A program made the position numbers and the translations under genes. Below the pieces are notes generated by a model. It was given only the letters and a program-made list of their open reading frames with translations, made no database searches and was not told where the DNA came from. Shown piece after piece: positions 28,032 through 61,096 of a DNA stretch of 64,000 nt. The stretch comes from Phaeosaccion multiseriatum (Eukaryota > Protista > Ochrophyta, other classes): the NCBI GenBank assembly GCA_965112735.1, contig OZ218950.1, forward strand, positions 4,402,001-4,466,000, read 5' to 3'. Each line of letters starts with the position of its first letter. Position 1 is the stretch's first letter.

Positions 28032-31000
28032 TCACAGGAAGTCGAGCACGAGTTTGTCCGTTACGGCATCGGCCACCTTGGAGCAGATGGCGTTAAAGAG
28101 AGCGTCGCTCGCCCGTGCCCCCTGCGCGATTTTCTGAAACGCTTGCGCGAGATCTCCGCCCCCAAGAGCTGTCCGCACTGAGCAGCCTCCCGCAGTGGCG
28201 AGGACTTGAAGAGCCGCGTGAGAGGCGTATGCGCCAAAGGCAATGACGTCGGTCTTCATATCCGGGTGCGCAGTCCTCATGCTCGAGATGAAGGCTGCTG
28301 CAGCCACGGAGTCGTCCGCCCCTCCATCTGACATGAAAATGATGTGGGGTAGGGCTCCAGGCGGGGTTGCTGCGACCTGCAAGTAAGCTTCGTTCATCGC
28401 GGGAGCAAACGACGTCCCACGGCCGTGCATGGACAGACTCGCGGCGCTCGCCAATACATCAATCGGCTGCTGAGCGTATACAGTCCGGGCAATTGAATCG
28501 AACTGAATCACAGTCACGAGGTCTCGTCCGCCCTGATTCTTGCTTCGCGCAGAGAGGAAGCCCTCGTACGCCCTCACGAGGTCATACCACGGGTTCCCTG
28601 ACATGGATCCACTTTCGTCCAGCACAAAGACGAAGTGAATGCCCGGTGCGCGGGTAAGAGGGCGTGCTCCACCAACGCCATCATCCACCAAAGAGATGCT
28701 CTTGAGGTAACGGCCGACGTCCTGACCCTCCTCAGAAGTGGTGGTGCCAGAAGCCGCCGCCGCCTCCTCCCGCTTCTTGAGGCTCTTCGCGACGAGCCCC
28801 TCCATCTGTCTGTCCATGGCGGCAGTCGCAAGCGGGTCCACTTGGCAGTGCATCACGAGCAGCTTCTTGGCGATGACGAGGTCGAAGGCTTTCTTGAGGT
28901 CTAGGAGTGACTCCTTGCTCTTGTCTGGATGGTCGTCACTCACGACCACCCCGGGTGCGAGTCCGCTGGTGAAGACGGTTCCATGGCATGGGTTGTCGGT
29001 AAACAGGATGATGAATCTGGCGATGCCTTTCCAGTCGTCCCACTTGGCGACTCTCTTTAGCGCCCCAGCCACGTCTTCCGCGTCGTCCCTCCCTCCGCTC
29101 GGAGATTGGATAGTCTTGAGCTGCTGAATGAACTCGTTTGCATCCGTCGTGAAGTGAGAGGAGACGTTGGCCCCACTCCCTTCGCCAGTACCCTCGGTCA
29201 CAAAATGTGTCTTCTCGTGCGTATCCCCGTAGTCCCGGAAGGCCAAGAAGGACAGACGGACTTCAAACTCTTGCTCAGGATGATGCTTGGTCACCTTGGA
29301 AGCAATTGAGTTGTCCCCTACCACAATGCTGTCCACCTGGGCCACCAGCTGGCGGTGAAGCCCCGCCATGCTTCCCGTCACGTCAATGACAAAGGCGAGG
29401 TCAATGACGATCTTGCCAGGGTCGCTGCCCGAGCAAATCATGAGCTCTCGATCTGTCCTCAGATGGTTGTGCAGCTGCTCAAAGCGAGACCAGCGCTCCT
29501 GCCCCAGCAGGTGCTCCACATCGATTTGATCTGCTCCACGCGCCACCAGGCACAGCTGCTCCCACTCCTTAAACAGGGCTCGAGAGCACGATGCCGCGTC
29601 GTCGTCCCCAGTCTGCTCTCTTCCTGCCGCCGCAGCGTCCATTTGGTCACACAAGCTCTTGAGAGCCTCGGGTATCGCGCTCGACAGGGCCGCCGCAATC
29701 CAGCGACCATAGAGCTGCTGTACGTTGGCCTGCTCCATGCCCACCGCGATACCAATCACATCAATGTCCCTACTCTGACACTCTGCCTGCGCCTGCGTGA
29801 GTCGCGCAGCACTGCTGCTGTGGCCGTCGGTCAGGACGAAGATCTTGGAAGGATGCTGCTGCCAAGATAGCAGGGACATGGCCAGCGAAACAGCCTCTGC
29901 GTCGCACGTGCGCCTCTGCTCGCGTGGGCGGAGGCGCGCAAACAAGGACAACGCCGCCCCAGGGCTCCACTCCTGTCCGGGCGCCTTGACGAGCTGCGCC
30001 TCCTTGCCGAAGAGAATCACATATGTGTCCTCAATGCCCACCTCCTGCAGCGCACCCAAGAGGACCACCAAGGCCTCGAGCGAGCTCTGCAGCAAATGAC
30101 CTTCCATCGACTGACTAATGTCCACTGCAATCGCCACGGCGTACTGACGCTGTCCGCCACAAGTCCGAGCAGAGAAAAACTTTTTGTAGGAAAAGTCTGT
30201 GCTCACGGCCTTGATGAGCCCAGGGAGGTCGAGCTGGCTGCCCTTGAAGGCGGCCTGTCTCCTCGTGAAGCGGTTGAAGGGGAAGAGAAGAGTCTCCATC
30301 ACAGCTGCGGTCTCTCCGATCACGCCTTGGAGCTTGCAGCTCAGGGTGATCCACTGCTCCATTGCCTGCTGTGCATCGGCAGGGAAGCGGCTCTCGAGCT
30401 CCACACACAAGGCATTGCAGCGACTGGGGAAGTCTTGTAGCGTGGCGCTGACCTGATCTTCGTCCTCGCCCAGCAGCGACGAAACCTGCCCGGCTCTGTC
30501 CATCTTCACTAGCGCCCGATCACGAAGGTGCTTCACTCGTTCCTCGATGCGGGCCTCCCCGCCGGGGGAGCTGACCGAGTACATGAGTGGGGGCCGTGCC
30601 ACTCCCTCTTGGAGAGCTGTCCCAATGTCCAGTGGGCTCGAGTGCAGCTCGTAGAAGCGCATGCTCCCTCCAAAGTCTCGAGCACTCCCAGAGAGGTGTT
30701 GCAGATCAGGCTCAAAGATGCTGCTGCTCTTGGTTGGTGGCCTGCCTCCGGCGCTCTTGGTTGGTGGCGCCGCGGCAGCCTTTACAGCGCCGTAGTCCTC
30801 CCGCATCACTCGCTTGAGGGATCGCGTCACCATCTGGTGCAGAACAAGCGGCAGAGCGCCCCCTTCCTCCCGCCTCGCCTTGTCCAGCAGCGTCGCCTGC
30901 GAGATGGGAAAGTAGAGCTCATTCGAGATAATCTTGAGCTTGGCATCCAGCCTCCCTGCAAACTCCCGCTCGCTGTCCTGGCGTGTGTGGAGGATGGCAA

Positions 31001-31915
31001 GCTCCACCTCGCACTGAGTCCGCAGCTCGACGAGGTCGAGCTCATTGCCGCTCATGTCCTGTCCTTTGCGGGGAGCAATCTCCTGGGAGAGGGCGTCCGT
31101 GATGACGATGGAGATGCGGCGCTGGAAGGGCTCTCGAGGGGCCACGAACAAGCCCCCCTGAGGGTTGGACCAAATCGCTTTGAGGCAGCTGCCGATGTGA
31201 GAGCTCTCGTCGTGAGAGAAGCCCGCCAGCACTCGCTCCCCTACACGCAGTGAAAAGGGCTCGTCCATATGCTTGAGGATGCGGCCTCTGTTGGCGTCCC
31301 CCAACGTGGCCACGGCGAAGCGGCACTCGAGGCGGCGAAGCACCTCCATAAGCACCGTCACCATCTCCGCCACGCTGTTACTCACTCGTGTCATGGAGCC
31401 GCTATTGTCCACAAGCACCGCCCACTCAATCTCCACGGGCTCTCCTGCTCGCTCCAGGCTGTCTTGGCTCACAATGGCACGGCAGTCCGAGAGTAAGTCC
31501 TTGACGAGCATAGCGAGGCCCTCGCTCTCCGCCAGCAGCTGGTATGTCCACTTCTCCTGCCTACCCTTGGACGCACGGAACTCAGATGGCAGCACCAGCA
31601 CGCGCGGATCATGCTGTAGCCTAATGTTCCCGGCTCTCTCAAACGTTTCGGTAATGTCCTGGTCACCCATCTTGCGCTCGATGTCCTTGGCGCCCAGCTG
31701 CAAGCTGACCTTGGCGAGCTGCATCTCTGCATACTCTTGCTCCTCAATCTCGGAAGCGTTGACAATCTTGAGGTCGCTCCTGTGAATGGGGGGGGGGCAG
31801 GATCGACACAGTCAAGGCGTCGTGCTCAGGATGGAGAGCATACAGGACATTATTGCTCACACACACGCACCCACACGCACACGCACGCACGCACATGCAC
31901 GCACGCACACGCACG

Positions 31916-31989
<74 letters not shown>

Positions 31990-34900
31990 TGGAAGGACCC
32001 TTACCGGCTGATCTTCTTGTTCTTCTTCTTTCTGGCCGGTTCGGTCGGCCTCGTGCTCGGCAGTGGGGGGTGCTGGCGCTCAGGAGGCCTCACGAGGGTC
32101 TTTGGGTTGGGAGCAAATTCGACTGTCTTTGGCGCCTCGAATGACGCATCGACAGGAGTGGACCTGGCCGGGAGCGCTCTGGGTAGCACATCATCCATGT
32201 CTAGCTGAATCTCGCCCAGTTTCACATGATTGACCTTCACCGATGTATTCGCGGCGGCGGCCTGCCTCTCCTCCCACAGGGAGCTCACCAGCTCGTTAAC
32301 ATCGTCCATATCTCCCCCCTCCTCCCCACCCCAGTCTCGCTGCCCCCCCCGCTCCTTCACCCCCCAGTTCTGCATGGCCGAGTTCTCGAAGGGGTCATCC
32401 TCATCCTCTTCTGGTGCTTGTTCAAAGGCCCGCAGCGCCTTCTGCTTGTCACTCGGATCGTCCAGCGGCACCTCAAAGTCTGCCTCCTTGTCCATTCTCT
32501 TGCCACTCGACACGTTCAGCCTCATCTCGTCGGGAATGTTGAGGGACTGGATGCTCTTCTCAAGCTTGCCCATCTCCCTCGCCAGCAGCCCCTCGGCTGT
32601 CCTGCTGCCCAGCTTCTTGAGACGCTGCTGGATCGCGTCCATCACCAGCAAATTGGACAGCCCTACCCGCACGAAGTCGCTCGTAACGCTGCGCTGCTCT
32701 TCGCCCTCGTCTTCCTGCCGCTGTCCCATCTCCCAGAAGCTAGCGTAGCCTTGTCTCCAACTCTTGCTCGACTCCGTGAGAGCAGGGATGCCTCGGCTGA
32801 GCTGCGCGCCCCCCACTGGATCGGACAAGCCTGGCGCTGAGGGAGCCTCTCCCAATGGAGTGGTGTCCGAGGCCACGAGGCAGTCCATCCTTAGTTCCAC
32901 CTTGGCATTGTCGAGCTGAAGCTTGGCACTCTCCAGAGCCCTCTTTGCCTCGTCCAGCTGCTGCTCATCACTCCTCGATGCTTGGTACGCCTGTTTGTGT
33001 ATTCGGGGACCGGGTACAGGATGGGTACATGAGTCCACCTTAACAGCAAGACGCCGTATACTGTTGGTTTGACCTCCTCCTCCTTCTTCTCCTCCTCGTC
33101 CTCCCCCGCTCCCTTATCCTCCTCCTCTTTCTCCTCCGCCTTCTCTTCCTCTTCCTCTTTCTCCTCCTCATCCTCTTCCTCCTCCTCCTCCTCCTCCTCC
33201 TCCTCCTCCTCCTCCTCCTCCTCCTCTTCCTCCTCCCCCTCCTCCCCATGCTTCCTCCCCTCACCTGAACACCGAGTCGCATACCCTCTTGCATCCCCTT
33301 GGACACCTCAAACGCGTGGTCCTGGAACTGCACCTTGGAGGACCCAATCAGAATAGCCGCAGAGTCCCCTATAGCTGCCTCAGGGGGGGCATGGCTCACA
33401 TCACCAAAGGTGGTACTTGCCATCTCACCCCTCCTCTCCCCCGGGAGTGACGCATTGGCGGCCTCTCCAGGCCCAGCGCTGCAGGGCGTCTCTCCTTCAG
33501 CCGCTCGAGCAGTGCCCTGAGAAGGACAACCGCGCTCTCCCTGCCGAGCTCCAAGGAACTCCCCCCCCCCGGCCCCTCCTGCCCGTCCAGCAGAGGTCGG
33601 TGCGATTCCACCCAGATCCTGGCCGTAACCCTGGTCCTGACTCTGGCCCTGATCCTGACCCTGACCCTGACCCTCACCCTCACCCTGCCCCTCACCCTGG
33701 CCCTTACCCTGACCCTGGCCCTGACCTTCACCCTGACCCTGACCCTGACCCTGACCCTTACCCTGACCCTGACCCTGACCGTGGTCCTGATCTTGACCCT
33801 GACCCTGACCCTGACCCTGACCCTGACCAAGCCCCTGGCCCTGACCCTGACTCTGACCCTGGGCCTCACCCTGACCCTGACCCTGGCCCTCACCCTGGCC
33901 CTGACCTTGGCCCTGACCCTGACCCTGACCCTGACCCTGACCCTGGCCCTGACCCTGACCCTGACCCTGACCCTGGCCCTGGCCCTCACCCTGACCCTGA
34001 CCAAGCCCCTCACCCTGACCCTGACCCTGACCCTGATCCTGACCCTGACCGTGGTCCTGACCTTGACCCTGACCCTGACAATGACCCTGACCCTGACCCT
34101 GACCCTGACCCTGACCCTGACCCTGACCCTGACCCTGACTCTGACCCTGGGCCTCACCCTGACCCTGACCCTGACCCTGGCCCTCACCCTGGCCCTGACC
34201 TTGGCCCTGACCCTGACCCTGACCCTGACCCTGACCCTGACCCTGACCCTGACCCTGACCGTGGCCCTGATCTTGACCCTGACCCTGACCCTGACCCTGA
34301 CCAAGCCCCTGACCCTGATCCTGACCCTGACCCTGACCAAGCCCCTGACCCTGACCCTGACCCTGACTCTGACCCTGGCCCTCACCCTGGCCCTGACCCT
34401 GACCGTGGCCCTGATCTTGACCCTGACCCTGACCCTGACCCTGACCCTGACCCTGACCCTGACCCTGACCCTGACCCTGACCCTGACCCTGACCAAGCCC
34501 CTGACCCTGGCCCTGATCCTGATCCTGACCCTGACCTTGACCCTGGCCCTGACCCTGACCCTGACCCTGACCCTGGCCCTCACCCTGGCCCTGACTCTGA
34601 CTCTGACCCTGGGCCTCACCCTGGCCTTGACGTTCATCTGGTGAGGTAGAGCATCTCCCCGTGGCAACCCCCTGATCTGCTGACTCCTTTTCCCAAGAGG
34701 CTCTGCAGAGAAGGTCATGGTCCTCCAGACGCATCAAGCCTGCCACCACGAGGAAGGAGCCGACGCTCCTCGCCAGGGCGTCGTGGCCTTGCGAGGCTTC
34801 ACCTCTCGACTGCAGCACCAGAGAGATGCCATGGGAGATGCTGCGCAACCCGGCGACAGCGATGCGACGATCAGAGGTTAGATTGTCGTCCCCACTCAAG

Positions 34901-37900
34901 CCGTCCAGCATCATGGAGAGACCGATGATGTGATTGAGACCCCGGGCCTGTGCTCCATCCCCATCCGGAGACGGGGTTGCTGTGGTAGCTGCTAGCTCCC
35001 CGATTTCTGCGATGAAGGCGGTGGAGCCTGCGTGAAGGCTCTCGAGCTTCTTCCCGACGGGCAGTCCATACTGGAACCACGCCGCCAGACGAGTCGGAGT
35101 GGAGGCCAGGATCCCAGAGGAGCAGTCCCGAACAAAGTCTGCCAGGCCCTGGAGCTGCTCGCGCTGGAGGCCTTGACCAGAAGGCAGCGAGGAAGCGACG
35201 CACAGATAGGCCTCGAGGGTAGCTTCCACACTTTGGCCGAGTGCTACCGCCGGTTGGTGGTGTCCATGCTCGACGAGGAGGAGGAAGGCCTGCGCTACGT
35301 CCACCGCGGGGTGCTCCTTCTCCTGCGAGGACAGCCACTTCAAGCCTTGCTGCAGGAGAGCCTGCACTTGCAGGGGGCTGACGTCCGAGGGCAGATACGC
35401 AAGCTTCTTCATGGTGTCGCTCTTCAGCAGCTCCACAGTGCAGCGCACCCGCCGTTGGAGAGCTCCGCTGGACTTGCGTGGGCTGCACTCCGTCAGCACA
35501 TCAATCAAAGGCTTCATCACCGCCTCCAGCGTGCTGTTGCTCAAAGTACTCCCACTACGGGCGACAGCGTACAGATGCCGAAGTGCCTCTGCCTTGCGCT
35601 TAGTCACCTCTATCTCCTCGTCGGTCATGAAGACTCCCGCGCCGACAAACTCCACCACAGCGGACAGAGTCCCATCAAAGTCAAAGGCAGACCCACCGAC
35701 CAAGGCTTCGCACAGCTGCGTATGATTCGCTGCGAATGTGACGATCGCCTTCTCCGGGGGCTTGATCGTCTGCTGCTGGGATGGGTCCAGCGCCTGTGGT
35801 GGGTGGAGCGCCCTCGTCAGCTCGGCAAAGCAGTCCGAGGTCCGCAGCGCCGCGAGCACCTCCTCTAACTCCGCTGACGTTTTGCCTCCGCTGAGAAGAA
35901 GCAGCAGATCGACCACACGCTCTGGTGATAGCTCGGCCTTCACCCCCTTCTCGTAAGCATCATCGGCAGCCCAAGCCTCGCGCAGGATGCCCCATGTGGG
36001 CCGCAGACCTGCCGCCTTGAGAAAGTGACGCACAGGGCGGCGATGGTACCGTACAGCGCACGAAGAGGCAGTCGCTGCAGTCTCACGCATCCCCTCCACC
36101 AGGTCTACAAACCAGGGGCGGCGGGAAGAGGAGGGGGGATATTGCTCAAGGACAGATAAGAGCGCATCCAGCACGATGTGCCCCTCCTGCTGCCTCTCCT
36201 TTCTCCACTCGGCGATGACTTGGCGATGGGGGTTCCACTTGCCGAAGAGAACAGTCCTCAGCACACTCCGCCACTCCTCCGAGTCCACAGCGGGCTGCTG
36301 AAGGGCACGGAGGAGACTGCACGAGGGCGGATCCAGACTGGCCAACATGTCCTCTTCGTTGAGGAGCTCCAGCCAAGCAGCAGGCCCCGACGCACAGGAA
36401 GACGCGCTCGGCGAAAGGGGAAGCTGAAGCTGCCCATAGGCAGCCAACAGAGGCCCCGCACTTACAGCCGCCTTGGACTCTGGACTGATCACTTCCAGCG
36501 ACAACTCCAGGGGGGCTCTTCCTCCGCCCCCGTCAGCCGCAATGCCAGCAAAGGTCTGCCAGCAGTGCTGAGACGGGTGTCCTGTACAGTATCAACAATC
36601 AAACAAATACAAAAGTCATACGGTAGTCGTTCGGATACAATAGCGGATCCCGCCGGCCATGAAATGGCAGGTCCTTTAGTCAAGTCGACCTCGTCCCCCA
36701 GTCCTGGCACTCAAACTCGACGCTGCTAAAGGAACATTACTCAGCCCGGCTACACACGCAAAACTTACCTCCCATATGCTTCCAGCGCTTCACTGCCTTC
36801 GCAGTGACTGGGAGCTGCAGCAGACTCGAGCAGGCTTGGTTCACCTCTGTTGGAGTCACCGCAACACTGCACAGAACCTCGCCGATCATCTCGTCGAGCA
36901 CAGTGGGCTTCTCCCCGTTGGCGAGTCGCTCCTCGACGATGGTACTCAGAGCCTCCCTCGCCGCTGTCGTTGACGAAGACTCCACGAGGCCTCTACGTGC
37001 CGCCTCCAGCACACTCTCACCGCACGCTGCGGCGTCCTCATCACTCAGTGACGGCAGGCCGGTGACAAGCCGCACCACCGAGGGCTGCTGGCCCAGCTGC
37101 AGGAGCTTAGATGCGCTGTGCCCCCCCGCCTCCACAACAGGAGCACTCCCGCCTTTCAGCCCATCAAAGTCCATCGCTGCGGAAGCATCCTCGCCGTGGA
37201 GAATACACCCAACCAGGCATGCTGCTGCAATTACTCTCTCTTCGTCTGGCCGAGATGTGCGAAGGAGTTCGATGGCAGCCAAAGGGTGCTGCCCCAGGGC
37301 ACTGATCGGCTGTAGTGGTGACGAGGGCGCGGCAGGAGGAGAGAGCGTGACCAGTAGAGACTTGCTGCCACCCTCTCGCACGGCGCCATCGGGGCCAACG
37401 CTACATTCTCCGGGGACCGCGAAGGTGATGATCGCATGGTGCATGCCCACGGGAGCAGCAGCAGTTGCGCCAGCAGCAGATGCAGGAGTCGCGCCGTCCA
37501 CGGTGGCCCGCAGCTTCCAGAAGTGGTGATCCCGGCCTTCCTTCCCTCTCTTGGGAGCCAGGTCAAGGAAGTCCTCACTAGACTCTTTCTCTGTGCACTT
37601 CTCGTCCTTGTAGCGCGTAAGGCTCAGAGCTGCGCCGGGTGTCGGGAGACCGCTTGCCCCAGAGAGAAGATGTGGGTTGCTGTGGGCGTCCAGACGGTAG
37701 CGTAGTGAAGCACCGCCTTCGTTGGTGCTGGCGAACATCGCCTCGTACGTATGCTCCTCTCCATGGACGGGAGCGAGACTGACGGCTGTAACTTCCTTGT
37801 GCTCCTTCTTCTTCTTCCTCTTCCCCGTGCTGGCGTCAGAGCACGCCACGAAAGCGAGGCGAGAGCCTTTCAGGCGGATATTGTATTCGCACAGGAGGGT

Positions 37901-51000: not shown

Positions 51001-54000
51001 ACCCCCATGTCAATGAGGGAGAGGAAGTGGTACTTGGTGATGTCGAAGGTCTCGTCCCTGGTGAAGGGCTCGAGCTCCACACACGTGAACATGGCATCCA
51101 CAGAGCGAGGGAGCCGCTTCCGGCCCCCTCCTACATTGGCGGGGTTCATCGTGGCGAAGAGGCGAACGCCAGTGAGGTCCTCTTCCTCAAGAATCTCGCC
51201 GCTGCCAGGCACCACGTACTGGCTCCTTCCTCGCGTCATCAGAGGGACCAGACCCTCCAACACCTCAGGAGGAGCGAGGTTGATTTCGTCGAAGAGCACC
51301 CACTGCCCCTGCTTGAGCGCCGTCAGCAGGCTCCCGTCTTGCCACCTAAAGACGCGCTTGTGCCCATCCGAGCTTGGCACAATGCTCCCGAATAGCATCT
51401 CCAGGCTGGTGTTGGTGCTAAAGTTGATGCGCTGCACCTCGTAGCCCAGCAAGCTCGCCGCCGCCTCCACACACGCCGTTTTGCCCACCCCCGGAGGCCC
51501 TCGGAGCAAGAGGGGCGCGTCCGCGGCGAGGCAAGCGAAGATCCGTGACATATTCTTGAGGGTGGTGGCCGTGCAGTGCAGCCTCATTCTGTGTCTGAGC
51601 TCGAGCGAGTCGCCTCTGTTCCGACACTCCTTCATTTCATCCGAGTCCGCAGGAGATGCCGTCACACCACCATAGCTGCTCTGCACGAGGCCGGCCTTTG
51701 TCCAGCGCAAGGGCGTTTGCAGCGCGTCCGGCGACGGCTCCCCCGCAATGTCCCTCAGGAACGGCTTGGAGGCACCGAGCTGCTGCGCCTGGCACCAGTC
51801 CTCCAGGAGGGCAAGCACGCCATCGGTAGGCACCGCGTCATCCAAGACGAAGAAGCGCACACCCACAATCATGCTCGTCTGGAGCTGCAGCAGCAGCAGT
51901 TGTGCGTCTGCTGATGCTGCCCTCGCGCCCACTCGAAGGGCGGCGGCAGAGGCCGTGTAGTCGCACACCCGAAGGAGGTGGGCGAGGCTGATGGCGCTCT
52001 TGCGCGAGGCGCGACGCCCCTCCTTCAGCCTCTGCCACATGGCCTTGAGGTGGGCAGCGATGGTGTTGGAGGCAGTCCCAACGTCATGCCGCTTCAGCTC
52101 CTCGCCCACACCCCTCTGGAGGGACATGAGACGCCGAGTCAGCACCCGGCTTAGCAGCTGCTCGATCTCTGCGTCTGCGTAAGAGGGAACCACACTGGGA
52201 CAAGGGATGAAGACGAAGGGAGAAAGAGCACACGAGATCAGGGGGGTTGAGGGGTCGTTCGGGAAAGAAACCGCCAACACAGATCCCCTCTCTCTTTCCG
52301 AGCGAAGCCACCCCCAACTTACATCTCTGTGAAGCGTGACCTTGTCGCAGGGCTCACGTTGATCCGATCATTCGCGGTGTCGCGGTGGATGGAGGCGAAG
52401 ATTTGCATCTGGGCAGGCACGCCAATGGTCTGACCTCCCGTGGCCGTTTCTTTGGGCCCGCCCCTGCCCGACGAAGGGATGCGCCGAGAAATATCCTCCG
52501 TCAGGTTGAAGGTGCGTCCGGGCTCGAGAAGGCTGTTGAGCCGCTCGGTCACGGACTGCTTTGGCAGATTGAAGTCCGCCAGAAACAGAGCCTGCGAGGA
52601 TGGAGAAGAGGTCAAGGGGTGAGCACGAGAACACGCGAAGACGGAGGAACGCACAGCGAGGCCGAACACTATCGCGCTCTGCTCTCACCTTGCCCTCCAG
52701 AACGGCGCGAGTCACTGGGCCTTCCCTGAAGCTGAAGATTGGGTCGGAGCTGTCGTCGTCAAACGTCTATTACAGGGTATGAAGAGGGCATGATGGCAAG
52801 ATCGAGGGTCGTGTTTAAGTCACAGGAGTAATGAAAGGCGTACATAGGTGAGAGTCATGGCTTCAACGTCGCCCCCACTCACCCTTCGTATTGCCCCTGT
52901 GAGGAAGGACAGCTTCTCTGCCAGCTGCTTGACAGCGTCGTCAGCCTCCCGCACCGAGTAGAGGAGCTGCTCGCGGATCTTGCCGGTCCTTTGAAGACAG
53001 TCTCGCATGGCCGCCACCAGCTGCGGACTCTTGGCGGGCTTGACCTTTGCAACTCTCCGGTGATCTGCCTCCACCGCAGCAAAGCCACTCAATCGTCCGT
53101 CTTGCACCGGCTCCTGAGCTGCTTCCTCCATGTCGGATGAGGAGGAGGAGCTGCGTCGCAGCTTCATGGGAACACTCTCGCTCTCACTCTCGGAGGAGGA
53201 GCCACAGCGGTCGCCAGAGAGTGGTGGTGGTGGTGGTGGTGTTGGTGGTAGGGCACTCGCTGCTACCACCACCCCTGTCCCTGTAGATTCGTCCTCGTCG
53301 GATGAGGAGGAGCTGCGGCTGCGGGGAGGTCTTACGGGTACTCTCTCACTCTCACTCTCAGAGGATGAGCCATGGCGCCCTCCCGGTGTGGGTGCGGCAT
53401 CATCGGCATCAGGCGCAGGTGGGTCGAAGACAGACCACTCTCCGTCGCTAGCGGTCTCGCCTCCACTCGACTCGTCATCTTCATTGTCATCGGTGGAGTA
53501 TCCGTCCAGGAAGTAGGAGTGCTCGTCCTCAGCATCACTCGAAGCTGGCTTGGGGCTGCTTCCTTCTCCATGTTGAGCGTTCTCGCACTCATCGCTGTCG
53601 TCGTCGGCGTACTCATCGAGGAGGGGTACCGCGGAGCAAAGCCCTTGAGCTTCGCCTCCTTCACACTCATCATCCGACAGGTCCTCCTCCTCCTCCTGTT
53701 GTGCGGTCTCTGCCTCCTGCTTGGACAGCCGAGCGAATGCGTCCATGGCGACACGAAGCTGCAGGGCCTGGTCGCGGAGATCGGAAAGGTCAGCGGCTGG
53801 CGCCTCTTTCCCCACTCCCACCACGTCGAGTCTCGCCACTGCCCGAAGCACGCTGTCGTGGACTTCCTTCATTGCCCCTTCCAAGCTAAAAGGGTACATT
53901 TGGCCGACCAAGTCTGCCCCTTCAGTCTCCGGGGACAGGAAGCAGCGTTCCAAGTGGTGCGAGTCGCTTCGTCCCGTGATTGCTGCCCACGTCTCCACCA

Positions 54001-57000
54001 GAAGCTTCTTGCAGGCGGTGGGGCCCACCAGCAGCACGGGCTCGTGGTTCTCGGTGGCGAGGAGGAGCAGGGCAAGGGCGCGCAGGAAGGAGGTAGGCAT
54101 GTCCTCCAGCAAGGCGTGCACTCCCTTCACGTCCACGCCCTCGATGGCCTTGCTCAGACTGCCCAGTCTCACGATGAGCTTGCCACCAGCAACCGTAATG
54201 TCGCACGCCGCTCTGGCGGTGGCAGCGTGGGCCGTCGGAGGGGTGGTGTGGTGCAGTCCAGAGAAAGGTAGCAAGTCATGTGCGCCGGCACCTACTCCAC
54301 TACCAAAGCCCTCGTGCAAGGCGCTCACGACGCGATCGAACGCGTCTTGAGTGGCGGTGCTGGAGAGCAGAAGGCTGGCGCCCGCGAGGTACCAGTGCTC
54401 CTTCTCGTCGACATTTCCCGTGGGGAAAAGGAGCTTGCGCCGCTGCGACCACTTGATGAGATGGCGCAGAGTGATGCGATTCCGCACATCCCCCGTCGCC
54501 AGCACCTCGTACACCGCCGCCAGGCACTCGGCAATGCTCTGCCCGCAGCTGCCCTCCTCCCACTCCATGAGGATCTGCTCCACCTCCACTCGCGTGAAGT
54601 CCTGCATCTGCACCTCAGAGAAGCGGCTGCGGAGGGTCGAAGGAAGCACATTGCGCCCAGCGTACCTAACCATAATGTATAGAGAGAGAGAGCAAGGAAG
54701 AGAGAGGGAAGGTAGACGCACAGCGAGTCAGCGATGATGCTTGGGAAGAGAGGAGACGAGAGGGGACGAGAGAACAAGAGAGAGGTAGAGATGAAGAGGG
54801 GAAGAGACGAAGAGACTCACCCACTGGCGTTCTGTGTAGCGAAGAAGCGGAAGCCATCTGCCGCTCGAATCTTTTCTGCAGTGCCAGGCACAGACAGAAC
54901 TGCGCCCGCCCCTCCCTCCAGCAGAGGCGCCAGCATGCTCAGCACGTTGGGGTCCGCGAGGTTGAACTCGTCTGCGAGGAAGTAGCTGCCGCTCTTCATA
55001 GCGCGGTAGAGAGCGCCTTCCTGGAACTCAAAGCGGTTGCCCACAGGAATGGGTGAGCCGAGGTAGTCCTGCATGGTGGTGGTCTGCGTGTTGTTGACTC
55101 GCTCCATGTGCACGCCTGCTGCGGTGGACAGCTCCACGAGAAGGGAGGTCTTGCCGCAAGACGCGGGGCCTTCAAGCAGCACAGGGTAATTGCACACGAT
55201 GGCCCCCTGCACCTGCTCGGCGTAGGCTTTGCGCTGCTCGGTGAAGACGTGCCTCTCGGAAGAGGACGAGGTGGAGGTGCTGTCGAAGAGAGAAGGGAGA
55301 GCGCACCCTCTAAGGGACAGCCGCGAAGCCACTTCTTGCGCCATACGCTCGCCTTTGCTCGAACTCTTGAAGAGGCCGGCGACAACAAGCTGAAAGGCCC
55401 CGGCGAAAGCGCTCTCGATGGAAGGCACGCTGGCCTCTCTCTGTACCCGCAGGCGGAACGTGCTGTCGAGAAGTCTCGTCAAGTGGCGAAAGGTGAGCTG
55501 CTCGCCAAGCAGGGCCGCGTCCAGCTGGCCGGGGCCGATCTCCGACCACACATAGAAGCACACGTCAACGATGCGTCCGCACGCGGTGCTGCTCTTGTCG
55601 ATGCCCAGGAGCGCCGTCGCCAGGACCCGCACCTCTTCCTTGAAGGCGTGCTCGTCCTCGACCCGAATGTCTTCCATATACACGTTGGCCAAGCGGTTAA
55701 GCAGCGCCGGGGAGGGCTCCGGCGATGGCCGAGAGCTGTGCCCCACCGAGGCCACGTTGGGGTCTGCGACGGTCATGGTGGCAAAGGTGCGGAAGGTGGG
55801 AGCTTTGGCGTTCACGGGGTGCCACGCCTCGTTCGGGTCTGTCTCTCCATTCTCCGTCAGTCGCCAGTCCACAGGGTCCTCTAGCAGGGGGTTGAGTCTC
55901 TCGAGCACGCAGGCGTCGGCATCACTGATGTTGTCCAGCAGCAGGAAGCTCTTGTCACGCAGCGCTTGCGTCACCAAGCCGTCTTGCCAGGCGATGCGTG
56001 GAGTCGAGACGGCCGCAGCTGCAGCCGTAGTCCCGGGCTCGGCGCAGCTGCTGCTGCTGCTGCTGCTGCTGCTACTGCGTGGTGTCTGCCCACCCACGAG
56101 CAGCGACACGTCCGTCTCCGGCGTGAGACAGATCTGCACGCACTCCATCTGGCAAAGCTCCGCCATGGCCAGGATTAGAGCGCTCTTGCCTGCCCCCACG
56201 GGCCCGACCAACAGCGTGGGAGTCTGGATGCGGCAGCACCTTGGGGGTTGCAATTGAATTGTGCAGACAGCAAAGAACAAGAACAAAAAAAGTAGGGGGA
56301 GTGGGTGGGTGGGCAAGGTAAGCGAAAGGGCGGACTGAGAAGGTAAGGCACCAGCTCCCCCGTACATGGCCCTCATATCTCACCTGGCGATCTGCATCAG
56401 CGATCTCTTGAGTCTCGGCGTGAGAGCAAAGGGGGCCGCGGGGACCCGCGTCAGCGCCTTGTCCTCGTGCTCGCGCTGGACTCGCTCCACTGCGGCGCGG
56501 TGAGGGCTCTCGTATCCCGCCACGTCCAGGATGCTCTGCACGACCATTGCCACGGCGTCTGGGTGTCGGAAGCGGTGTAGATACACTCGAGCAGCGGCAC
56601 TAACGACCACACTCTTGTCCAGCGCAAGTGGGCCTCCGCTGCTGTTGCTGCTGGTGGTGGTGGTGCTGCTGGTGGTGGTAGCGGTGGTGGGGGTGGTACT
56701 CTGTTCCACCGCCAGTGCGAGCAGGTCTTTGCAGCAGGAAGAGATGCCAAAGTGAATGCCAAATCGGCTGAAGAAGCCCTCGGAGAAGACCATCCTGCAC
56801 ATGGCCACATGCATCCGAAAGACCAGTCGAAGAGACGCCTCGTCGATGCGCGAAGCGAGCGCATGCTGCTGGGTCTTAAAGAGCTCGAAGACCGCGCCAT
56901 CCTCCTCATTCACCAGGCCGATGGAGAACTGCCCCGGCGAGGGAAGTGTGACTCCGTCGAATGGTAGGCGCACCTCTCCGATGCTGACTCCGCTGCAGTC

Positions 57001-60000
57001 GACGCGCAGGGGCACTTCTCCTCCATGCCCTTCGCATGCCGCTGCCGATGGCCACAAGTCGGCGATCATCCCTGCCACCACTCCTCGCGTAGACGCCTGC
57101 CGGAAGCGCGCTCCGTAGGTGCCCCACATCTCGAAGCCAACAATGGCGGCCAGGTCATCGACGCTTTCACCGGAGGACAGCCGCTGAAAGGCATGATCCT
57201 TGACTTGCAGCAGCTCGCGGATAGAGGTGACGGCGTAGCCCTTGCGCTCGGTAAAGGCGGGGAAGTCTTTTTCAGCAGCGTCTTGAGAGCCCTGCATCCA
57301 GCGGCCGAGGCTGTCATGGAACTCCACCATCTGCTGGGCCTGTACGGCGAATGTGCACTTGTGCTGTGGGTGGGTGGCGACGAAGAATGACTGGAGAACG
57401 TCTACCCACTCCTCCTTGGGCAGCTCCGCAAAGGCCAGTGGCATGAAGCGACTGAGGAAGCTCTCGGAGAGCTGCTCGCGCTTGCCCTTGAAGAAGCCCG
57501 AGTTGGGGTTCTGCGTGGCGAACAGTCGGAAGTCCTTGTGCCTCTCAATGACACGGATGGCAGTGGAAGCGTCAGCGGGGTTACGCAGCGTGAGTCGGCC
57601 CGTGTCGAGGGCGCCCTCGATAGACTGCAGCACTGAGTCTTGGGCGAGGTTGACTTCGTCGAGCAGCAGCCAGTGGCCATCCCGGAAGGCCACGGTGAAG
57701 GGCTGCTCCATCGTGGCGAACTCGTCGTTCGAGGTCAACACGACATGCCCGAACAAGTCATCAGTCGTCACAGTTCGGCTCATCTGGAGGGAGGAGGAGC
57801 AGAAGGTGGAGGGGGAGCAGAAGAAGGAAGGAAGAAACAGAGTAAGCAACGATAAATCGAGGAGTAGGATTGACATGAATGTGTAGAGACACATGCACAC
57901 AGACAGCCGAACTTACATTGAAACGAACGAGCTTTCTTCCGACGCTCTCCGCTGCCTTCTGCACAGTAGCGCTCTTGCCCACTCCGGTGCCGCCCTCCAG
58001 CAGAATGGGGGCCCGACTGTCCGTCAGCAGAAGCACCTTGTCCAAGTTCTTCTGCGTGGTGCGAGTGAGCACCATCTTGCTCTCTCCCGCCTTCACCCCT
58101 TCTCCTCCTCCAGCCGCCGTCTGCGGTGCGGGTATGTCCAGGATTTCGTTGACAGAGACGCCGCCACCACCACCACCTCCCTTCTGTGCGTGTGCTCCTC
58201 CACTGCTCATCCTCCGGCCTTCAGCCGCAGGCTGCTGCTTACTCTTCACTTTGAGCTTGTCTGCCATCCTCTGGAAGTGAGAGGTCTTGAGGGAGTCCAG
58301 GGGGGAGATGGCAGAGAGCGACTTGGTCGTCGCGCTCTCACTCAGGTAGAGCCGCCCATCGCTGGACGCTGCCTCGGCTGTGGCAGTGGCCTTCCGCAGT
58401 GCATCGCCGGCTTCATCGTCCGCCGCTGTGTCTCCGCAGTGGTTCGCGGCGCAGAGGGCCTCTGTCTGGGTGTGACTGAGGCTGAGGGCCTTGGCGAGCA
58501 GGGCAGTCACAAATGTCCGAACGTCCTTGGATGGGTGCGTCGAAAGGCCCAACAGCTCAGGGACACACGCCCCGATGAGATGCAAACTCCGTTGGCAAAG
58601 CACACTTGTCAGTCGCCGCAACTGAGCCTCCTGCTCGAGGGAGGGAGCTGGGCTGCCACCGAGCTGCACGAGACACCTCTTCACAAAAGCAACGCGCGTC
58701 AGACGCTCTTGCATATGTGCCTGCTCCGACCAAAACGGAGTGGAAGCCGGGAGGACATCCAGCACTCGAAGAAGGTCCTCGTCCACCCACGGTGCCGCGA
58801 GGAAGCACGCCAACTTGTCGTCGCTCAGAAGTATCTCCTGCAGTATCTGCAAAGACCTCTGAGAGCCGCTCTCCACATTGGTGTCTGTGGCGGTCCACGA
58901 CCAAAGGACGCGCAGCAGCCGCACCTGACACAGCACCAGAGACCTTCGGAGTGAGACAAGAAGCTCCTCCACCCCTTCGGCGAGCAGGGGCGATTCGTGG
59001 AGAAAGAAGATTAGCGCAGAGCCTTCCGTCCCAAAGAGTCTCTGAAGGTTGGGGATGGGCTCCTTGGAGGGGTCCGTCATCTCCAGCAGCATGTTGGTGA
59101 GCCACAGCAGGGTGGACATGCTGCTCTTGGCGGAAGGCACCGCGGATTGGGCCTCCTGCAGGGTGGCCAGGAGGATGGATGGCACCCCCGCAGCAACGTC
59201 CCTCGCCAGCTTCGCATCTGGACAGTCCACGAGGTGCTTGTAGACCGCGTCGCTGGTGTTCTTGAAGTAGGGTTGCACGCGATCCGTGAGCAGCTGCAGA
59301 GCGCACGCGGGTTGTTTCTTCGCAGAGGCCACGATGAGGGTACACAGCGTCTCTGGTGTCGCGTGGTGCGGGTTGGCGTAGAGTATAGACAGCACTTGAG
59401 ACACCTTGTCGCCCACCAAGTCTTGCAGCTCCTCTACCGAAGCGAGCTGCTGGGAGGACACACGATGAAGCTCGTGCTGTGCGAGCGCCTCCAGCACGAC
59501 CTGGCAGCTTAGCGCGGCCTCAATATCCTTCCGAGAGATGCCCTCCTCTTCCTCCTCCCCGCTGTTGTCCAAGCGACGGTATAGCAGGGCGAGAATGTCG
59601 GTGATAATCAGCAGCAGAGCACTTTCTTCAGCCCCACCCGCAGATGCTTTCAACTTCTCGCGAAGCTGTACCAGCACGACATCGAGGAGCCACTTGCCAC
59701 CGAGTCTGCTGTCCACGCTGTCCTCGCCTAACGACCTCTGCAGCGCTGGAAGGCACGCCTCAATCGCCCAGGAGTCGCTGCTCGTCACCACGCTTTCAAA
59801 GACCTCTGTCCAGTGCGAGGCGAAGGATGGTAGCTGACACGCTTCGTACAGAGGCATGGAGAGCGCTCGTGCCAGTCGCGGAGAGCTGAGCATGGGGCCT
59901 AGCAGCAGCTTCACTTTGGCCTCTGCTGGGGAGGAAGTGGGATCTTGTAGCAACAGGCCTCCTCCCTTGCTGCGCCCGTGGAGCAGGTCGACAAGCCACG

Positions 60001-61096
60001 TGCATGTGTGCTCGAGCCACGTGTCGGGGCTCAGGAGGAGAGACAGGAGCCTCTGTCGTTCCGGGCACGTCGGAGCCGCTTGAAGGAAGCGGGGTGTGAA
60101 AGGCTTCCGAGACCAAGCGCCGTCACTCCATCCCAGCCAGTGAGCCTTGGCGAGCTCCGGGTGAGCGGCCTCGACGTCACGGCCTAGGAGAAGGGGCAGT
60201 GCGCTTAGTGACACATCGCTCTTGACGGGATTGACACCCTGTGCCGGGTAAAAGCCTTTAGAACGGACGGGGTGGGGGGGCAGTGGGGAAGGGAAGAGGT
60301 GGTGGATGGACAGGCCCGTGAGTGAGAGGTTGGAAGTAGACCATGCCAGGCGAACAAAATACACAAAACAAGCAGTAAGGGGATGTGTACACTTACCCTT
60401 GCTGGGAGCTGCGGGGTAGAGAATGAGGCTCCATAGCATGAACAGAGGGGAGAGACTGAACGGGCCCAATCCTTGTCGTCGCAGCAGTGGCAAGGATTGC
60501 AGCTGGTCCTGGTGCCTGAGTCGCTCCAGAAGGGCACTGATGAGGCGGTAGGCATCGTCCACCGCCACCGCAGAGAGGGGGGGCGTGGACTCATCCTGGC
60601 CACTACGCGGCGGAGAGAGCTTCAGCTTAAAGTCTTGGCTGACTGTGCAGCTGTATAGCGCCTTGATAAGGTGCGGCAACAAGAGGATCACGCTCTCCTG
60701 AGCAGCCTGAAGCCCTTCTGCTGAGACACATCGGCACCTCGCCACCAGCCGCCAAGCCTGCCAGACGACCCCACCAGCCTCCACGCTCAGCCACGGGAAA
60801 GCCTCCATACTCTCCCCTCGACAAGCCCTGAAGGAGCGACCATAGAGCCCCTCCTCATTCGGCAGCAGGATAAGCTGGTTCAGGTCCTGGATTTCCGTCT
60901 CGCTCAGACTGTCTGCAGTCACCCGTGAAAGCTCGGCGGCGAAAGTACGGAGAGCTACCGTCGCTGCCTCCTCTTCCTGCTGTGTAGCAGCAAGTCTTCC
61001 TGGTTGCTCCTGCTGCAGTCCTTTTGCAAGAGCTTTCAATCTCTTTCGGCAAGCCTTGTCCCACACATAGAGCTGGGAAGAGAACGAGGATGCCAT
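28032..61096 (-). CDS. Giant midasin/Rea1-like protein (~10,472 aa): 6 AAA+ modules, long linker, ASH/PapD-like Ig repeats, Gly-Gln repeat, 4 vWA domains
   Basis: Exons 61096-60397, 60255-57917, 57783-56384, 56239-54821, 54665-52883, 52766-52689, 52591-52323, 52194-45749, 45654-36769, 36581-33265, 33038-32005, 31779-28032. Total 31,419 nt; all 11 introns are GT-AG and phase-compatible. Splicing restores split motifs ([16 protein letters not shown]; [22 protein letters not shown]; [23 protein letters not shown]; RSRFTE/IVVPSY). Walker A motifs [53 protein letters not shown] motifs DNSGS, DISQS, DVTGS, DESGS. Confidence 0.85.
31919..31986. repeat. (CA)n microsatellite in the last intron of the giant gene
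   Basis: Pure CA run within intron 32004-31780. Confidence 0.95.
33612..34630 (-). repeat. ~1-kb hexamer array (GGTCAG)n, read as (Gly-Gln)n in exon 10 of the giant gene
   Basis: (CCCTGA)n on the + strand. Variant units keep the 6-bp period and give GE, GL, DQ, SQ, DH with no stop in the gene frame. Confidence 0.95.
41450..41990 (-). repeat. Coding 99-bp (33-aa) tandem repeat, ~5.5 copies, acidic
   Basis: [17 protein letters not shown](R/H)VQVEG(A/T)APAVGEEES. The anchor CTGGCTGC recurs at 41583, 41682, 41781, 41880, 41979. Confidence 0.95.

What the first reader, a model, noticed from the sequence alone, without database searches (positions are those of the whole stretch)
28032..61096. A ~10,470-aa midasin-like machine with a non-canonical tail (6xAAA+ - linker - Ig/ASH repeats - GQ repeat - 4x vWA)
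Seen: about ten ORF-track entries are exons of one 31,419-nt frame with 11 phase-compatible GT-AG introns, and splicing rebuilds AAA motifs across the junctions. Known: midasin/Rea1 (~5,000-5,600 aa) has six AAA+ modules, a linker, a D/E-rich region and one MIDAS domain, and pulls UBL-domain factors (Rsa4, Ytm1) off pre-60S ribosomes. This protein keeps the ring order (module 3 ERVNN..QDYLG, module 5 [16 protein letters not shown], module 6 DN Walker B with a large insert). It is about twice the size, is strongly diverged, and adds Ig-like repeats and three further vWA domains. Inference: a midasin paralogue repurposed as a multi-client remodelling machine, a single-chain analogue of MoxR-vWA pairs. 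It might act in ciliary assembly or defence, by loose analogy with giant ATPases such as RNF213. I know of no description of this architecture. The junctions at 45749/45654, 36769/36581, 33265/33038 and 32005/31779 rest on splice signals and phase only.
Basis: partly seen in the sequence, partly recalled or inferred. Interest (0 to 1): 0.95.

Follow-up and report, generated by a model that had tools for sequence, protein, structure and literature searches.

The report
Giant second-lineage midasin-like ATPase gene
This is a real, roughly 10,500-residue gene for a midasin-like motor protein with four metal-binding vWA domains. It belongs to an old, widespread and apparently undescribed sister family of the ribosome-assembly factor midasin, so it points to a second, unknown job for this kind of machine.

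Summary
The observation largely holds. On the minus strand, from ATG 61096 to the stop at 28032-28034, ten long open segments link through GT-AG introns. It has no in-frame stop and shows a coding-type GC1/2/3 pattern in every exon.

Confirmed features:
- six AAA_5 modules, with midasin as by far the best solved relative (E 2e-113);
- a 170-copy GQ hexamer repeat;
- four vWA domains, each with a DxSxS MIDAS motif.

Not confirmed here: Ig/ASH repeats (one sub-threshold hit) and a midasin-type linker (no homology detected).

A metagenome relative (L001) carries the same gene as three ORFs.

The gene belongs to a family of 6,000-8,000-residue proteins, about 9,500-10,500 in this subclade. The family occurs in green algae, a chlorarachniophyte, a chrysophyte, a haptophyte, an amoebozoan, rotifers and a cnidarian. 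It separates from canonical MDN1 with 100/100 bootstrap support. Bryopsis and Mesostigma each hold both kinds, so it is a paralogue.

No paper describing the family was found. Function is inferred only by analogy with Rea1.

The parts
28032..61096 (-). Whole gene, first ATG to stop codon; about 10,522 codons in a 9-intron model
   Evidence: collinear with relatives
57917..61096 (-). Exon 1: about 1,000-residue N-terminal extension with no recognised domain, then the start of AAA1 (Walker A at 57994)
   Evidence: Pfam and PDB hits only at residues ~1007-1079; Walker A; only a weak collinear match of the extension to L001 (iE 0.017)
57784..57916 (-). Intron 1 (133 nt, GTAAGT..CAG), splits AAA1
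   Evidence: homologue HSPs end near 57896-57908 and resume at 57783-57789
56384..57783 (-). Exon 2: rest of AAA1 (Walker B at 57672) and a poorly conserved insert
   Evidence: AAA_5 2.6e-12
56240..56383 (-). Intron 2 (144 nt, GTGAGA..AAG). It removes the single in-frame stop at 56380-56382. The acceptor is atypical and uncertain
   Evidence: the junction is bridged by the unbroken ORF P0174 in L001
54821..56239 (-). Exon 3: AAA2 (Walker A 56205, Walker B of DN type at 55947) and the AAA3 core (Walker A 55170)
   Evidence: AAA_5 5.2e-24, 2 stretches
54666..54820 (-). Intron 3 (155 nt, GTGAGT..TAG)
   Evidence: in P0174 the aligned residues run 768 then 770 across this point
52883..54665 (-). 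Exon 4: AAA3 lid, then an acidic, Ser/Pro-rich low-complexity stretch
   Evidence: AAA_lid_7 below Pfam's cut-off (17.7 bits); composition
52679..52882 (-). Intron 4a (204 nt, GTGAGT..CAG). Boundary uncertain; a micro-exon at 52689-52766 is an alternative
   Evidence: homologue alignments to the next exon begin at 52633-52588
52323..52678 (-). Exon 4c: start of AAA4
   Evidence: conserved in all full-length relatives; matches P0174 residues 1403-1507
52195..52322 (-). Intron 4b (128 nt, GTAAGT..CAG)
   Evidence: P0174 residues run 1507 then 1510 across it
45749..52194 (-). Exon 5: rest of AAA4, then AAA5 (Walker A 51500, DE Walker B 51302), then AAA6 (degenerate P-loop 50387, DN Walker B 49778), then about 1,100 residues of Leu-rich post-ring region
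   Evidence: AAA_5 6.1e-43 in 3 stretches and AAA_lid_7 at 28.6 bits; midasin 2e-113
49247..58093 (-). The six-module AAA+ ring as a whole (approximate bounds, introns included)
45655..45748 (-). Intron 5 (94 nt, GTATGT..CAG)
   Evidence: the point lies inside the unbroken ORFs P0174 and P0177 of relatives
36769..45654 (-). Exon 6: 2,962-residue divergent middle region with no Pfam family above threshold. It contains a 33-residue E/A-rich tandem repeat at 41515-41988
   Evidence: collinear homology to P0177 and to L001
36582..36768 (-). Intron 6 (187 nt, GTAAGT..CAG)
   Evidence: bridged by the third ORF of L001
33265..36581 (-). Exon 7: about 640 residues with no detectable relatives, then the GQ repeat
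   Evidence: open frame of 1,183 codons; GC3 0.69-0.72 in the first part; no homologues
33610..34631 (-). GQ repeat: hexamer x170 (GGTCAG on the coding strand), 340 codons of which 148 are Gly and 143 Gln
33039..33264 (-). It holds a (GAG)n array at 33073-33245. The least certain junction
32005..33038 (-). Exon 8: conserved pre-tail region
   Evidence: matches P0001 residues 44-280 and L001 third-ORF residues 2637-2909
31780..32004 (-). Intron 8 (225 nt, GTAAGG..CAG) with a (CA)n microsatellite at 31858-31986
   Evidence: spacing across it is 97 residues here against 99 in the unbroken L001 ORF
28032..31779 (-). Exon 9: tail with four vWA domains, then the stop codon
30870..31442 (-). vWA-1 (DxSxS at 31409). 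Divergent: no Pfam hit when scanned alone
   Evidence: aligns to the VWA_2 region of relative P0025
29625..30152 (-). vWA-2 (DxSxS at 30122), the counterpart of midasin's MIDAS domain
   Evidence: VWA_2 and VWA about 1e-22; Rea1 MIDAS 6qt8 at 8.8e-5; canonical MDN1 C-terminal domain; human MDN1 MIDAS 8ql1 by fold (the table does not say which of the four domains aligned)
28755..29417 (-). vWA-3 (DxSxS at 29384)
   Evidence: VWA_4 weak hit
28125..28652 (-). vWA-4 (DxSxS at 28619)
   Evidence: VWA_3 1.6e-14

Best explanation
One nuclear, intron-containing gene of a GC-rich eukaryote encodes a soluble protein of about 10,500 residues. A SufBD gene fragment next door suggests the organism bears a plastid. 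On the ring tree the nearest named relative is a Prymnesium MAG.

Domain order: an N-terminal extension of about 1,000 residues; a six-module AAA_5 ring of midasin type; about 6,000 residues of fast-evolving, partly repetitive middle region; then four vWA domains that all keep the MIDAS metal-binding motif.

It belongs to an old paralogue family of midasin (MDN1/Rea1). That family co-exists with canonical midasin in at least two species and is scattered over at least five eukaryotic supergroups.

Shown: the gene structure, the domain content, membership of the family, and the paralogy of the family.

Inferred by analogy with Rea1 and with MoxR-vWA pairs: ATP turnover in the single-chain ring (the Walker B acidic pair is intact in AAA1 and AAA5, degenerate in AAA2 and AAA6, and of DD type in AAA4) moves the long tail. 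The vWA domains grip acidic residues of client proteins through their MIDAS ions. The machine would then pull clients out of a large assembly, and four vWA domains would allow several grips at once. The client is unknown. It is probably not the pre-60S particle that canonical midasin serves, because the canonical gene is kept alongside in relatives.
For: Single gene:
- A phase-consistent GT-AG model with no in-frame stop over 31.6 kb, and a coding GC1/2/3 pattern in all exons.
- The relative L001 carries the same gene as three consecutive ORFs of 846, 4,464 and at least 3,289 residues. These are collinear with window exons 1-9 and bridge introns 2-8.
- P0177 spans the ring and the exon-6 homologue in one ORF. 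P0001 spans exons 8 and 9.
- Transcript-derived relatives from Chlorarachnion (P0017) and Copromyxa (P0159, labelled a complete ORF) carry ring and tail on one mRNA.

Midasin relationship:
- Solved midasins at 2e-113, dynein at 1e-6.
- A midasin lid domain.
- AAA3, AAA4 and AAA5-6 each map best to the same-numbered MDN1 modules, and vWA-2 maps to the MIDAS domain.

Paralogue family:
- Relatives score 600-990 bits against 330-410 for canonical midasins. With the window's own ring the figures are 260-654 against 130-210.
- The split has 100/100 bootstrap support.
- Bryopsis holds BSKO_01177 (canonical) plus BSKO_10106 and BSKO_10123 (giant). Mesostigma holds Mv12798 (canonical) plus Mv01936 (giant).

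Tail:
- 164 cluster representatives match it at E<1e-30, many of them at the C-terminus of 6,500-7,400-residue proteins.
- Four DxSxS motifs and four predicted vWA folds.
Against: - No transcript evidence exists for this organism.
- The acceptors of introns 2, 4a and 7 are weak or ambiguous.
- Exon 7 has no detectable homologue, even in L001. The 1-kb GQ hexamer array could in principle be spliced out.
- Whether this genome also has a canonical MDN1 could not be checked.
- The post-ring region shows no detectable homology to the midasin linker, so a Rea1-like linker swing is an assumption.
- Nothing here identifies a client or a cell compartment.
Confidence: 0.8

Rival explanations
1. It is simply this organism's own, very divergent and expanded canonical midasin (an orthologue of MDN1), doing the usual pre-60S job.
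For: Midasin is the closest solved relative. Ring order and a MIDAS-like vWA domain are kept. Automatic pipelines name some relatives 'Midasin'. The presence of a second, canonical gene in this genome was not testable.
Against: The window groups with the giant family, apart from canonical MDN1, in 100/100 bootstraps. Scores fall into two separate bands. Two species hold both kinds. There are four vWA domains instead of one, and no detectable midasin linker or long D/E-rich region.
Confidence: 0.04
2. The region holds two or three adjacent same-strand genes (a ring ATPase, one or more middle proteins, and a multi-vWA protein), like a MoxR-vWA gene pair, rather than one polypeptide.
For: Exon 7 has no homologues. 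Junctions 6 and 7 rest on splice signals here. Many database gene models of relatives start at AAA5 or hold only the tail.
Against: The gaps are only 94-226 nt, have consensus donors exactly at the frame ends, and leave no room for promoters. Unbroken ORFs in L001 and P0177 span the homologues of exons 5-6 and 6-9. Transcript-derived relatives carry ring and tail together. The short models are fragments called on short contigs or cut at introns.
Confidence: 0.08
3. The locus is a decaying pseudogene or an assembly chimera that only looks like a gene.
For: Long simple repeats are embedded in it: the GQ hexamer x170, a (GAG)n array, a (CA)n array and a 99-nt x4.8 repeat. Large parts are very divergent.
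Against: Open frames of up to 3,003 codons at 60% GC cannot arise by chance; random sequence of this composition should meet a stop about every 31 codons. No in-frame stop occurs in 10,522 codons. The catalytic and MIDAS motifs are intact. Order and spacing are collinear with an independent relative. The GQ array has no frame-breaking indel, and its mismatches concentrate at third codon positions.
Confidence: 0.03

Closest known systems
Midasin / Rea1 / MDN1 (pre-60S ribosome maturation AAA+ ATPase)
   Same: Six tandem AAA_5 modules in one chain, with a midasin-type lid. Modules 3, 4 and 5-6 each match the same-numbered midasin modules. One vWA domain (vWA-2) matches the MIDAS domain by sequence, and the modelled tail as a whole matches it by fold.
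   Different: Twice the length. An N-terminal extension of about 1,000 residues. No detectable linker homology and no long D/E-rich region. Four vWA domains, with the MIDAS-like one not at the C-terminus. A separate clade (100/100) that co-exists with canonical MDN1 in relatives.
Unnamed giant midasin-like proteins in public databases (for example Apatococcus lobatus WJX74_002690, Bryopsis sp. KO-2023 BSKO_10106 and BSKO_10123, Mesostigma viride Mv01936, Chlorarachnion reptans, Copromyxa protea, Epipyxis sp., Hariotina reticulata, a Prymnesium MAG, Rotaria and Adineta rotifers, Hydractinia LOC130614024)
   Same: Same ring (31-48% identity) and the same four-vWA tail (28-42% identity), in the same order of parts.
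   Different: Most are 6,000-8,000 residues. The window and its closest metagenome relatives (L001, P0177) are about 9,500-10,500. The middle region is barely alignable. ASH, Cep192-type and PF22544 Pfam hits are on record for some relatives but not seen significantly here.
Bacterial MoxR-vWA pairs (for example NorQ-NorD and CbbQ-type activases)
   Same: An AAA+ of the same clade working with a MIDAS-containing vWA partner. NorQ and NorD appear among the sequence and fold matches.
   Different: Those are homo-hexamers of a single-module protein plus a separate vWA protein. Here, six modules and four vWA domains are fused in one eukaryotic, intron-containing gene.
Dynein heavy chain
   Same: A single-chain ring of six AAA+ modules; weak similarity of AAA5 to dynein AAA modules (1e-6).
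   Different: Far more distant than midasin. No stalk or microtubule-binding domain was recognised, and a vWA tail is present instead.
VWA8 (animal AAA_5 plus vWA protein; named from my own knowledge, not recovered by any search here)
   Same: Combines dynein/midasin-type AAA_5 modules with a C-terminal vWA domain.
   Different: About 1,900 residues with a single vWA domain. Its relationship to this gene was not tested. It lay outside the length window and has no solved structure that came back.

Membership tests
Canonical midasin (MDN1/Rea1) orthologue | Six tandem AAA_5 modules in one polypeptide, with a midasin lid domain | tested here: met
   AAA_5 stretches: 1 (E2) + 2 (E3) + 3 (E5). AAA_lid_7 scores 28.6 bits in E5, above the 22.7 cut-off. 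P-loops are listed.
Canonical midasin (MDN1/Rea1) orthologue | Groups with canonical MDN1 in a phylogeny of the ring | tested here: not met
   NJ tree of AAA5-AAA6, 46 taxa, 604 columns: canonical MDN1 splits from the giant family plus the window in 100/100 bootstraps. Score bands are separate.
Canonical midasin (MDN1/Rea1) orthologue | Large helical linker after AAA6, homologous to the Rea1 linker | tested here: not met
   Exon 6 and the post-ring part of exon 5 give no hit to solved midasins or to three canonical MDN1 proteins. Profile-profile hhalign of 16 giants against 16 canonical midasins gave probability 0.1%. Caveat: the alignments were quick ones, and fold-level similarity was not tested.
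Canonical midasin (MDN1/Rea1) orthologue | Long D/E-rich region directly before the MIDAS domain | tested here: not met
   Only short acidic patches exist: exon 6 residues ~1200-1400, exon 8 ~200-300 and exon 4 ~300-400. The (GAG)n array lies in predicted intron 7.
Canonical midasin (MDN1/Rea1) orthologue | A single MIDAS (vWA) domain at the C-terminus | tested here: not met
   There are four vWA domains with DxSxS motifs. The one that matches MIDAS is the second of the four.
Canonical midasin (MDN1/Rea1) orthologue | Binds UBL domains of Rsa4/Ytm1 (NLE1/WDR12) on pre-60S particles | not testable with these tools
   No interaction or localisation data are available.
Giant midasin-like paralogue family (unnamed) | Ring closer to family members than to canonical MDN1 | tested here: met
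   Collinear phmmer scores are 260-654 against family members and 130-210 against canonical midasins. The window is sister to JGI P0177 and P0174.
Giant midasin-like paralogue family (unnamed) | C-terminal tail of four vWA domains | tested here: met
   The tail aligns end to end with the C-termini of P0005, P0013, P0017, P0020, P0159 and others. Pfam finds four vWA stretches in relative P0025.
Giant midasin-like paralogue family (unnamed) | ASH / Cep192-type Ig-like domains in the middle region | tested here: inconclusive
   Window: Cep192_D3 at E 0.021 only. L001: Cep192_D6 at E 0.025. AF2 of the region was unusable, pLDDT 32. Relatives: ASH in P0013 at 5.3e-6 (27.0 bits, level with Pfam's 27-bit cut-off); ASH, Cep192_D3 and PF22544 are on record for P0159, P0171 and P0185.
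Giant midasin-like paralogue family (unnamed) | Co-exists with a canonical MDN1 in the same genome | not testable with these tools
   Shown for Bryopsis sp. KO-2023 and Mesostigma viride. The window's genome is not available to search.
MoxR-vWA systems | Single-module MoxR ATPase that forms a homo-hexamer, with a separate (or simply fused) vWA partner, in prokaryotic operons | tested here: not met
   Six modules lie in one chain of a spliced eukaryotic gene. The gene is related to these systems only at clade level (NorQ 8.4e-6).

The most novel reading that the evidence does not exclude
Eukaryotes inherited two midasin lineages from a very early ancestor. The well-known one matures ribosomes. 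This second one is lost in fungi, land plants and vertebrates but kept in algae, amoebae, rotifers and cnidarians. It is a four-handed AAA+ extraction machine for a different, still unknown large assembly, and in this lineage it has grown to about 10,500 residues.
Probability: 0.45. Interest if true: 0.8.

Novelty: new variant of a known kind. Interest (0 to 1): 0.66.

Why it matters
Midasin is treated as a single-copy, single-purpose factor of ribosome assembly. A second lineage with an intact six-module ring and four MIDAS-type vWA domains is conserved across green algae, Rhizaria, stramenopiles, haptophytes, Amoebozoa and some animals. That means the midasin design was reused for another task nobody has studied.

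It also gives a natural comparison for how ring, linker and MIDAS domains co-evolve. It adds an item to reconstructions of the gene set of early eukaryotes. It also shows that gene callers routinely break these genes apart: many database entries are fragments, or carry the bare name 'Midasin'.

Tried and rejected
- Identifying the source organism by exact look-up of a neighbouring ORF failed. Most neighbouring ORFs have no Pfam family.
I used shorter relatives instead.
The scan with the window's tail alone found no relative.
- A protein search with the exon-6 piece found nothing.
- Iterative local searches seeded on the ASH region of P0013 recruited nothing.
I did not send it another way. The single-sequence model was useless.
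- PDB sequence searches of exons 6, 7 and 8 gave nothing meaningful.
- Rejected ideas: an alternative genetic code for the in-frame stop at 56380, because a consensus donor sits on it; a transmembrane or secreted protein, because no hydrophobic segment lies inside an exon; an exclusively ciliary role, because Copromyxa has a member.
- The joined, spliced protein was not assembled or searched. Every search used single exons by reference, and the splice model was tested by phase arithmetic and by collinearity with relatives.

Full report
**What is in the sequence**

The window is about 60% GC throughout. Between 61123 and 28035 the minus strand carries a chain of very long open segments: 1,120, 510, 520, 635, 121, 2,208, 3,003, 1,183, 370 and 1,259 codons. 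They change frame from one to the next and are separated or overlapped by only tens to a few hundred bases. At this composition a random frame should meet a stop about every 31 codons, so these frames are not chance.

At each place where a frame closes there is a consensus donor (GTAAGT, GTGAGT, GTATGT or GTAAGG). A phase-compatible AG lies 94-226 nt downstream.

My model has nine introns: 57916..57784, 56383..56240, 54820..54666, 52882..52679, 52322..52195, 45748..45655, 36768..36582, 33264..33039 and 32004..31780. It runs from the first ATG at 61096 to the stop at 28032-28034.
- It totals 31,566 nt, or 10,522 codons.
- No exon has an in-frame stop when phases are carried through.
- GC at codon positions 1/2/3 is about 0.65/0.45/0.73 in every exon. 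The introns are 0.49-0.59 GC.
- Two of the predicted introns hold microsatellites: (CA)n in intron 8 and (GAG)n in intron 7.

A possible 78-nt micro-exon at 52689-52766 would add one intron.

All searches used single exons by reference, and the model was tested by phase arithmetic and by comparison with relatives.

**Domains**

Pfam finds AAA_5 once in exon 2, twice in exon 3 and three times in exon 5. It also finds the midasin lid domain, and vWA families in exon 9.

Walker motifs:
- AAA1 is split by intron 1, with Walker A at 57994 and Walker B at 57672.
- AAA2 has Walker A at 56205 and a DN-type Walker B.
- AAA3 has Walker A at 55170.
- AAA4 has a DD-type Walker B at 51854.
- AAA5 has a full P-loop at 51500 and a DE Walker B at 51302.
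- AAA6 has a degenerate P-loop at 50387 and a DN Walker B about 200 residues later, at 49778.

Solved midasins are by far the best sequence match of exon 5, at E 2e-113 with 6-7 matched stretches. Dynein reaches only 1e-6. The end of exon 1 matches the start of midasin AAA1.

Against three canonical midasins, AAA3, AAA4 and AAA5-AAA6 each match their same-numbered module best. AAA1 and AAA2 are ambiguous.

Exon 9 has four DxSxS motifs, at 31409, 30122, 29384 and 28619. An AlphaFold model of the tail, built on 22 sequences, has mean pLDDT 72 and shows four alpha/beta domains. Its fold matches are tandem-vWA proteins, the human MDN1 MIDAS domain in complex with NLE1 (8ql1, E 2.2e-8, target TM 0.73), vWF A3 and NorD. 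By sequence, the second vWA domain is the one that matches the Rea1/MDN1 MIDAS domain.

The GQ repeat is a hexamer array of 170 copies at 33610-34631 with no indels. It spans 340 codons, 148 Gly and 143 Gln, and its mismatches concentrate at third codon positions. Exon 6 holds a 99-nt x4.8 repeat that is 95% identical between copies.

**What was not confirmed**

- Exons 1 (first 1,000 residues), 6, 7 and 8 have no Pfam family above threshold and no solved relative.
A single-sequence AlphaFold run on that region was unusable, at pLDDT 32.
- The post-ring region shows no similarity to the midasin linker, neither by phmmer at maximum sensitivity nor by profile-profile comparison of 16 giants with 16 canonical midasins (probability 0.1%).
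- There is no long D/E-rich region.
- No hydrophobic segment lies inside an exon.

**Relatives and the single-gene question**

A search of 1.84 billion representatives with the tail found 164 proteins at E<1e-30. Many align to the very C-terminus of proteins of 6,477-7,408 residues. Named sources are Bryopsis sp. KO-2023, Chlorarachnion reptans (transcriptome) and Mesostigma viride.

A ring search added these sources:
- Copromyxa protea (a transcript labelled complete, 7,465 residues);
- Apatococcus lobatus;
- Hariotina reticulata;
- Epipyxis sp.;
- a Prymnesium MAG;
- many Rotaria and Adineta proteins;
- Hydractinia LOC130614024.

tblastn of these proteins on the window gives collinear matches in the order exon 1 end, 2, 3, 4, 4c, 5 and then exon 9. 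HSP ends sit at the predicted splice sites.

The closest relatives are two JGI metagenome proteins. P0177 is 48% identical in the ring and also matches exon 6 collinearly.

The contig of P0174 (L001, 32.8 kb) carries three consecutive same-strand ORFs of 846, 4,464 and at least 3,289 residues, the last cut by the contig end. Together they are collinear with window exons 1 to 9.
- Residues run 768 then 770 across the window's intron 3.
- Residues run 1507 then 1510 across intron 4b.
- Spacing across intron 8 is 99 residues in L001 against 97 here.
- The homologues of exons 5 and 6 lie in one ORF, and those of exons 6, 8 and 9 in another.

That relative is itself about 9,500 residues.

Exon 7 remains without any detectable homologue. 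Its inclusion rests on four things: its 1,183-codon open frame, its coding-type composition, its splice signals, and its position between exons that are joined in the relative.

**Orthologue or paralogue**

With the Chlorarachnion ring as query, family members score 600-990 bits and canonical midasins 330-410. With the window's own AAA5-AAA6 region the bands are 260-654 and 130-210.

A neighbour-joining tree (46 taxa, 604 columns) separates canonical MDN1 from the giant family in 100 of 100 bootstraps. The window is sister to P0177 and P0174, and that group is sister to the Prymnesium MAG.

A search with the canonical midasin of Nannochloris returned canonical midasins of Bryopsis sp. KO-2023 (BSKO_01177) and Mesostigma viride (Mv12798). 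These same two species also hold giant-family genes. The family is therefore a paralogue that lives beside canonical midasin.

The family is spread over Chlorophyta, a streptophyte alga, Rhizaria, stramenopiles, haptophytes, Amoebozoa and Metazoa. This suggests an early duplication followed by many losses, although the tree is unrooted and gene transfer is not excluded. Whether the window's own genome has a canonical MDN1 could not be tested.

**How it probably works**

Shown here: a midasin-type six-module ring with intact motifs in several modules, and four vWA domains that keep the metal-binding motif.

Inferred from Rea1/Mdn1 and from MoxR-vWA pairs (established knowledge; NorQ-NorD also appears): ATP-driven movements of the ring are passed through the tail. 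The vWA domains hold acidic residues of clients through their MIDAS ions. The machine then pulls proteins out of a large assembly.

Four vWA domains suggest several simultaneous or alternative grips. The fast-evolving, repeat-rich middle suggests a long flexible spacer or scaffold.

The client is unknown. Some relatives carry ASH-type domains, which in other proteins mark centrosomal, ciliary or Golgi proteins. But a member in Copromyxa, an amoeba that to my knowledge has no cilia, argues against a purely ciliary role. Nothing supports a defence role.

**Literature**

Five full-text searches found no paper describing a second, giant midasin-like family. One paper that looked relevant discusses only the MoxR-dynein-midasin relationship (PMC3495828). 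Absence from the held library is not proof that no description exists.

**Verdict**

The gene is real and is one gene. The paralogue interpretation is right at family level. The claim of a unique architecture is wrong in the sense that the family is widespread in databases, although it appears to be unstudied.

Noticed in passing
window 62252-62764 (minus strand): An ORF fragment with a strong SUF system SufBD core domain (1.3e-44) lies about 1.1 kb upstream of the giant gene's ATG, on the same strand. A nuclear SufB/D-type gene suggests a plastid-bearing eukaryote.
   Followed up: partly
window 2694-5930 (minus strand) and 973-2007 (minus strand): Neighbouring long ORFs include a 1,078-residue ORF with a Laminin_G_3 / concanavalin-A-like lectin domain and a 344-residue ORF with Sel1 repeats. 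The other large ORFs between 6.9 and 27.7 kb have no Pfam family.
   Followed up: no
window 41515-41988: A 99-nt tandem repeat, 4.8 copies at 95% identity, lies inside exon 6. It encodes a 33-residue E/A-rich unit. The high copy identity suggests recent expansion inside a coding exon.
   Followed up: partly
window 31858-31986 and 33073-33245: A (CA)n microsatellite and a (GAG)n / CCTCCT array sit inside predicted introns 8 and 7. In another frame the (GAG)n array would read as a poly-Glu stretch, so an acidic coding version cannot be fully excluded.
   Followed up: partly
L001 (JGI metagenome 3300048582, contig Ga0498910_0000099), 5918-31926: The closest contig-level relative has its breaks between ORFs at different places from the window's introns. 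One is a clear GT..AG intron near 21921-22040, inside the exon-6 homologue. It has none of the window's introns 2-8, so intron positions are not conserved within this subclade. The first break, near 8442-8455, looks like a frame change without room for an intron.
   Followed up: partly
relatives P0172 and P0005 (Bryopsis sp. KO-2023 BSKO_10106 and BSKO_10123): Two giant-family genes lie 17 locus tags apart on the same 5.68-Mb contig and are nearly identical in the ring on the tree. This is a recent local duplication of a gene of roughly 7,000 codons.
   Followed up: no
relative P0214 (ENA, 7,669 aa): This protein scores in the canonical-midasin range against the window's ring, yet the tree places it on a long branch inside the giant clade. 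It may be a third, very divergent type or a long-branch artefact.
   Followed up: no
relatives P0160-P0170 and P0178 (Rotaria and Adineta): Bdelloid rotifers hold many distinct giant-family proteins of 4,000-8,000 residues, more copies than any other group seen. I did not examine whether this reflects their degenerate tetraploidy, gene-model fragmentation or real expansion.
   Followed up: no
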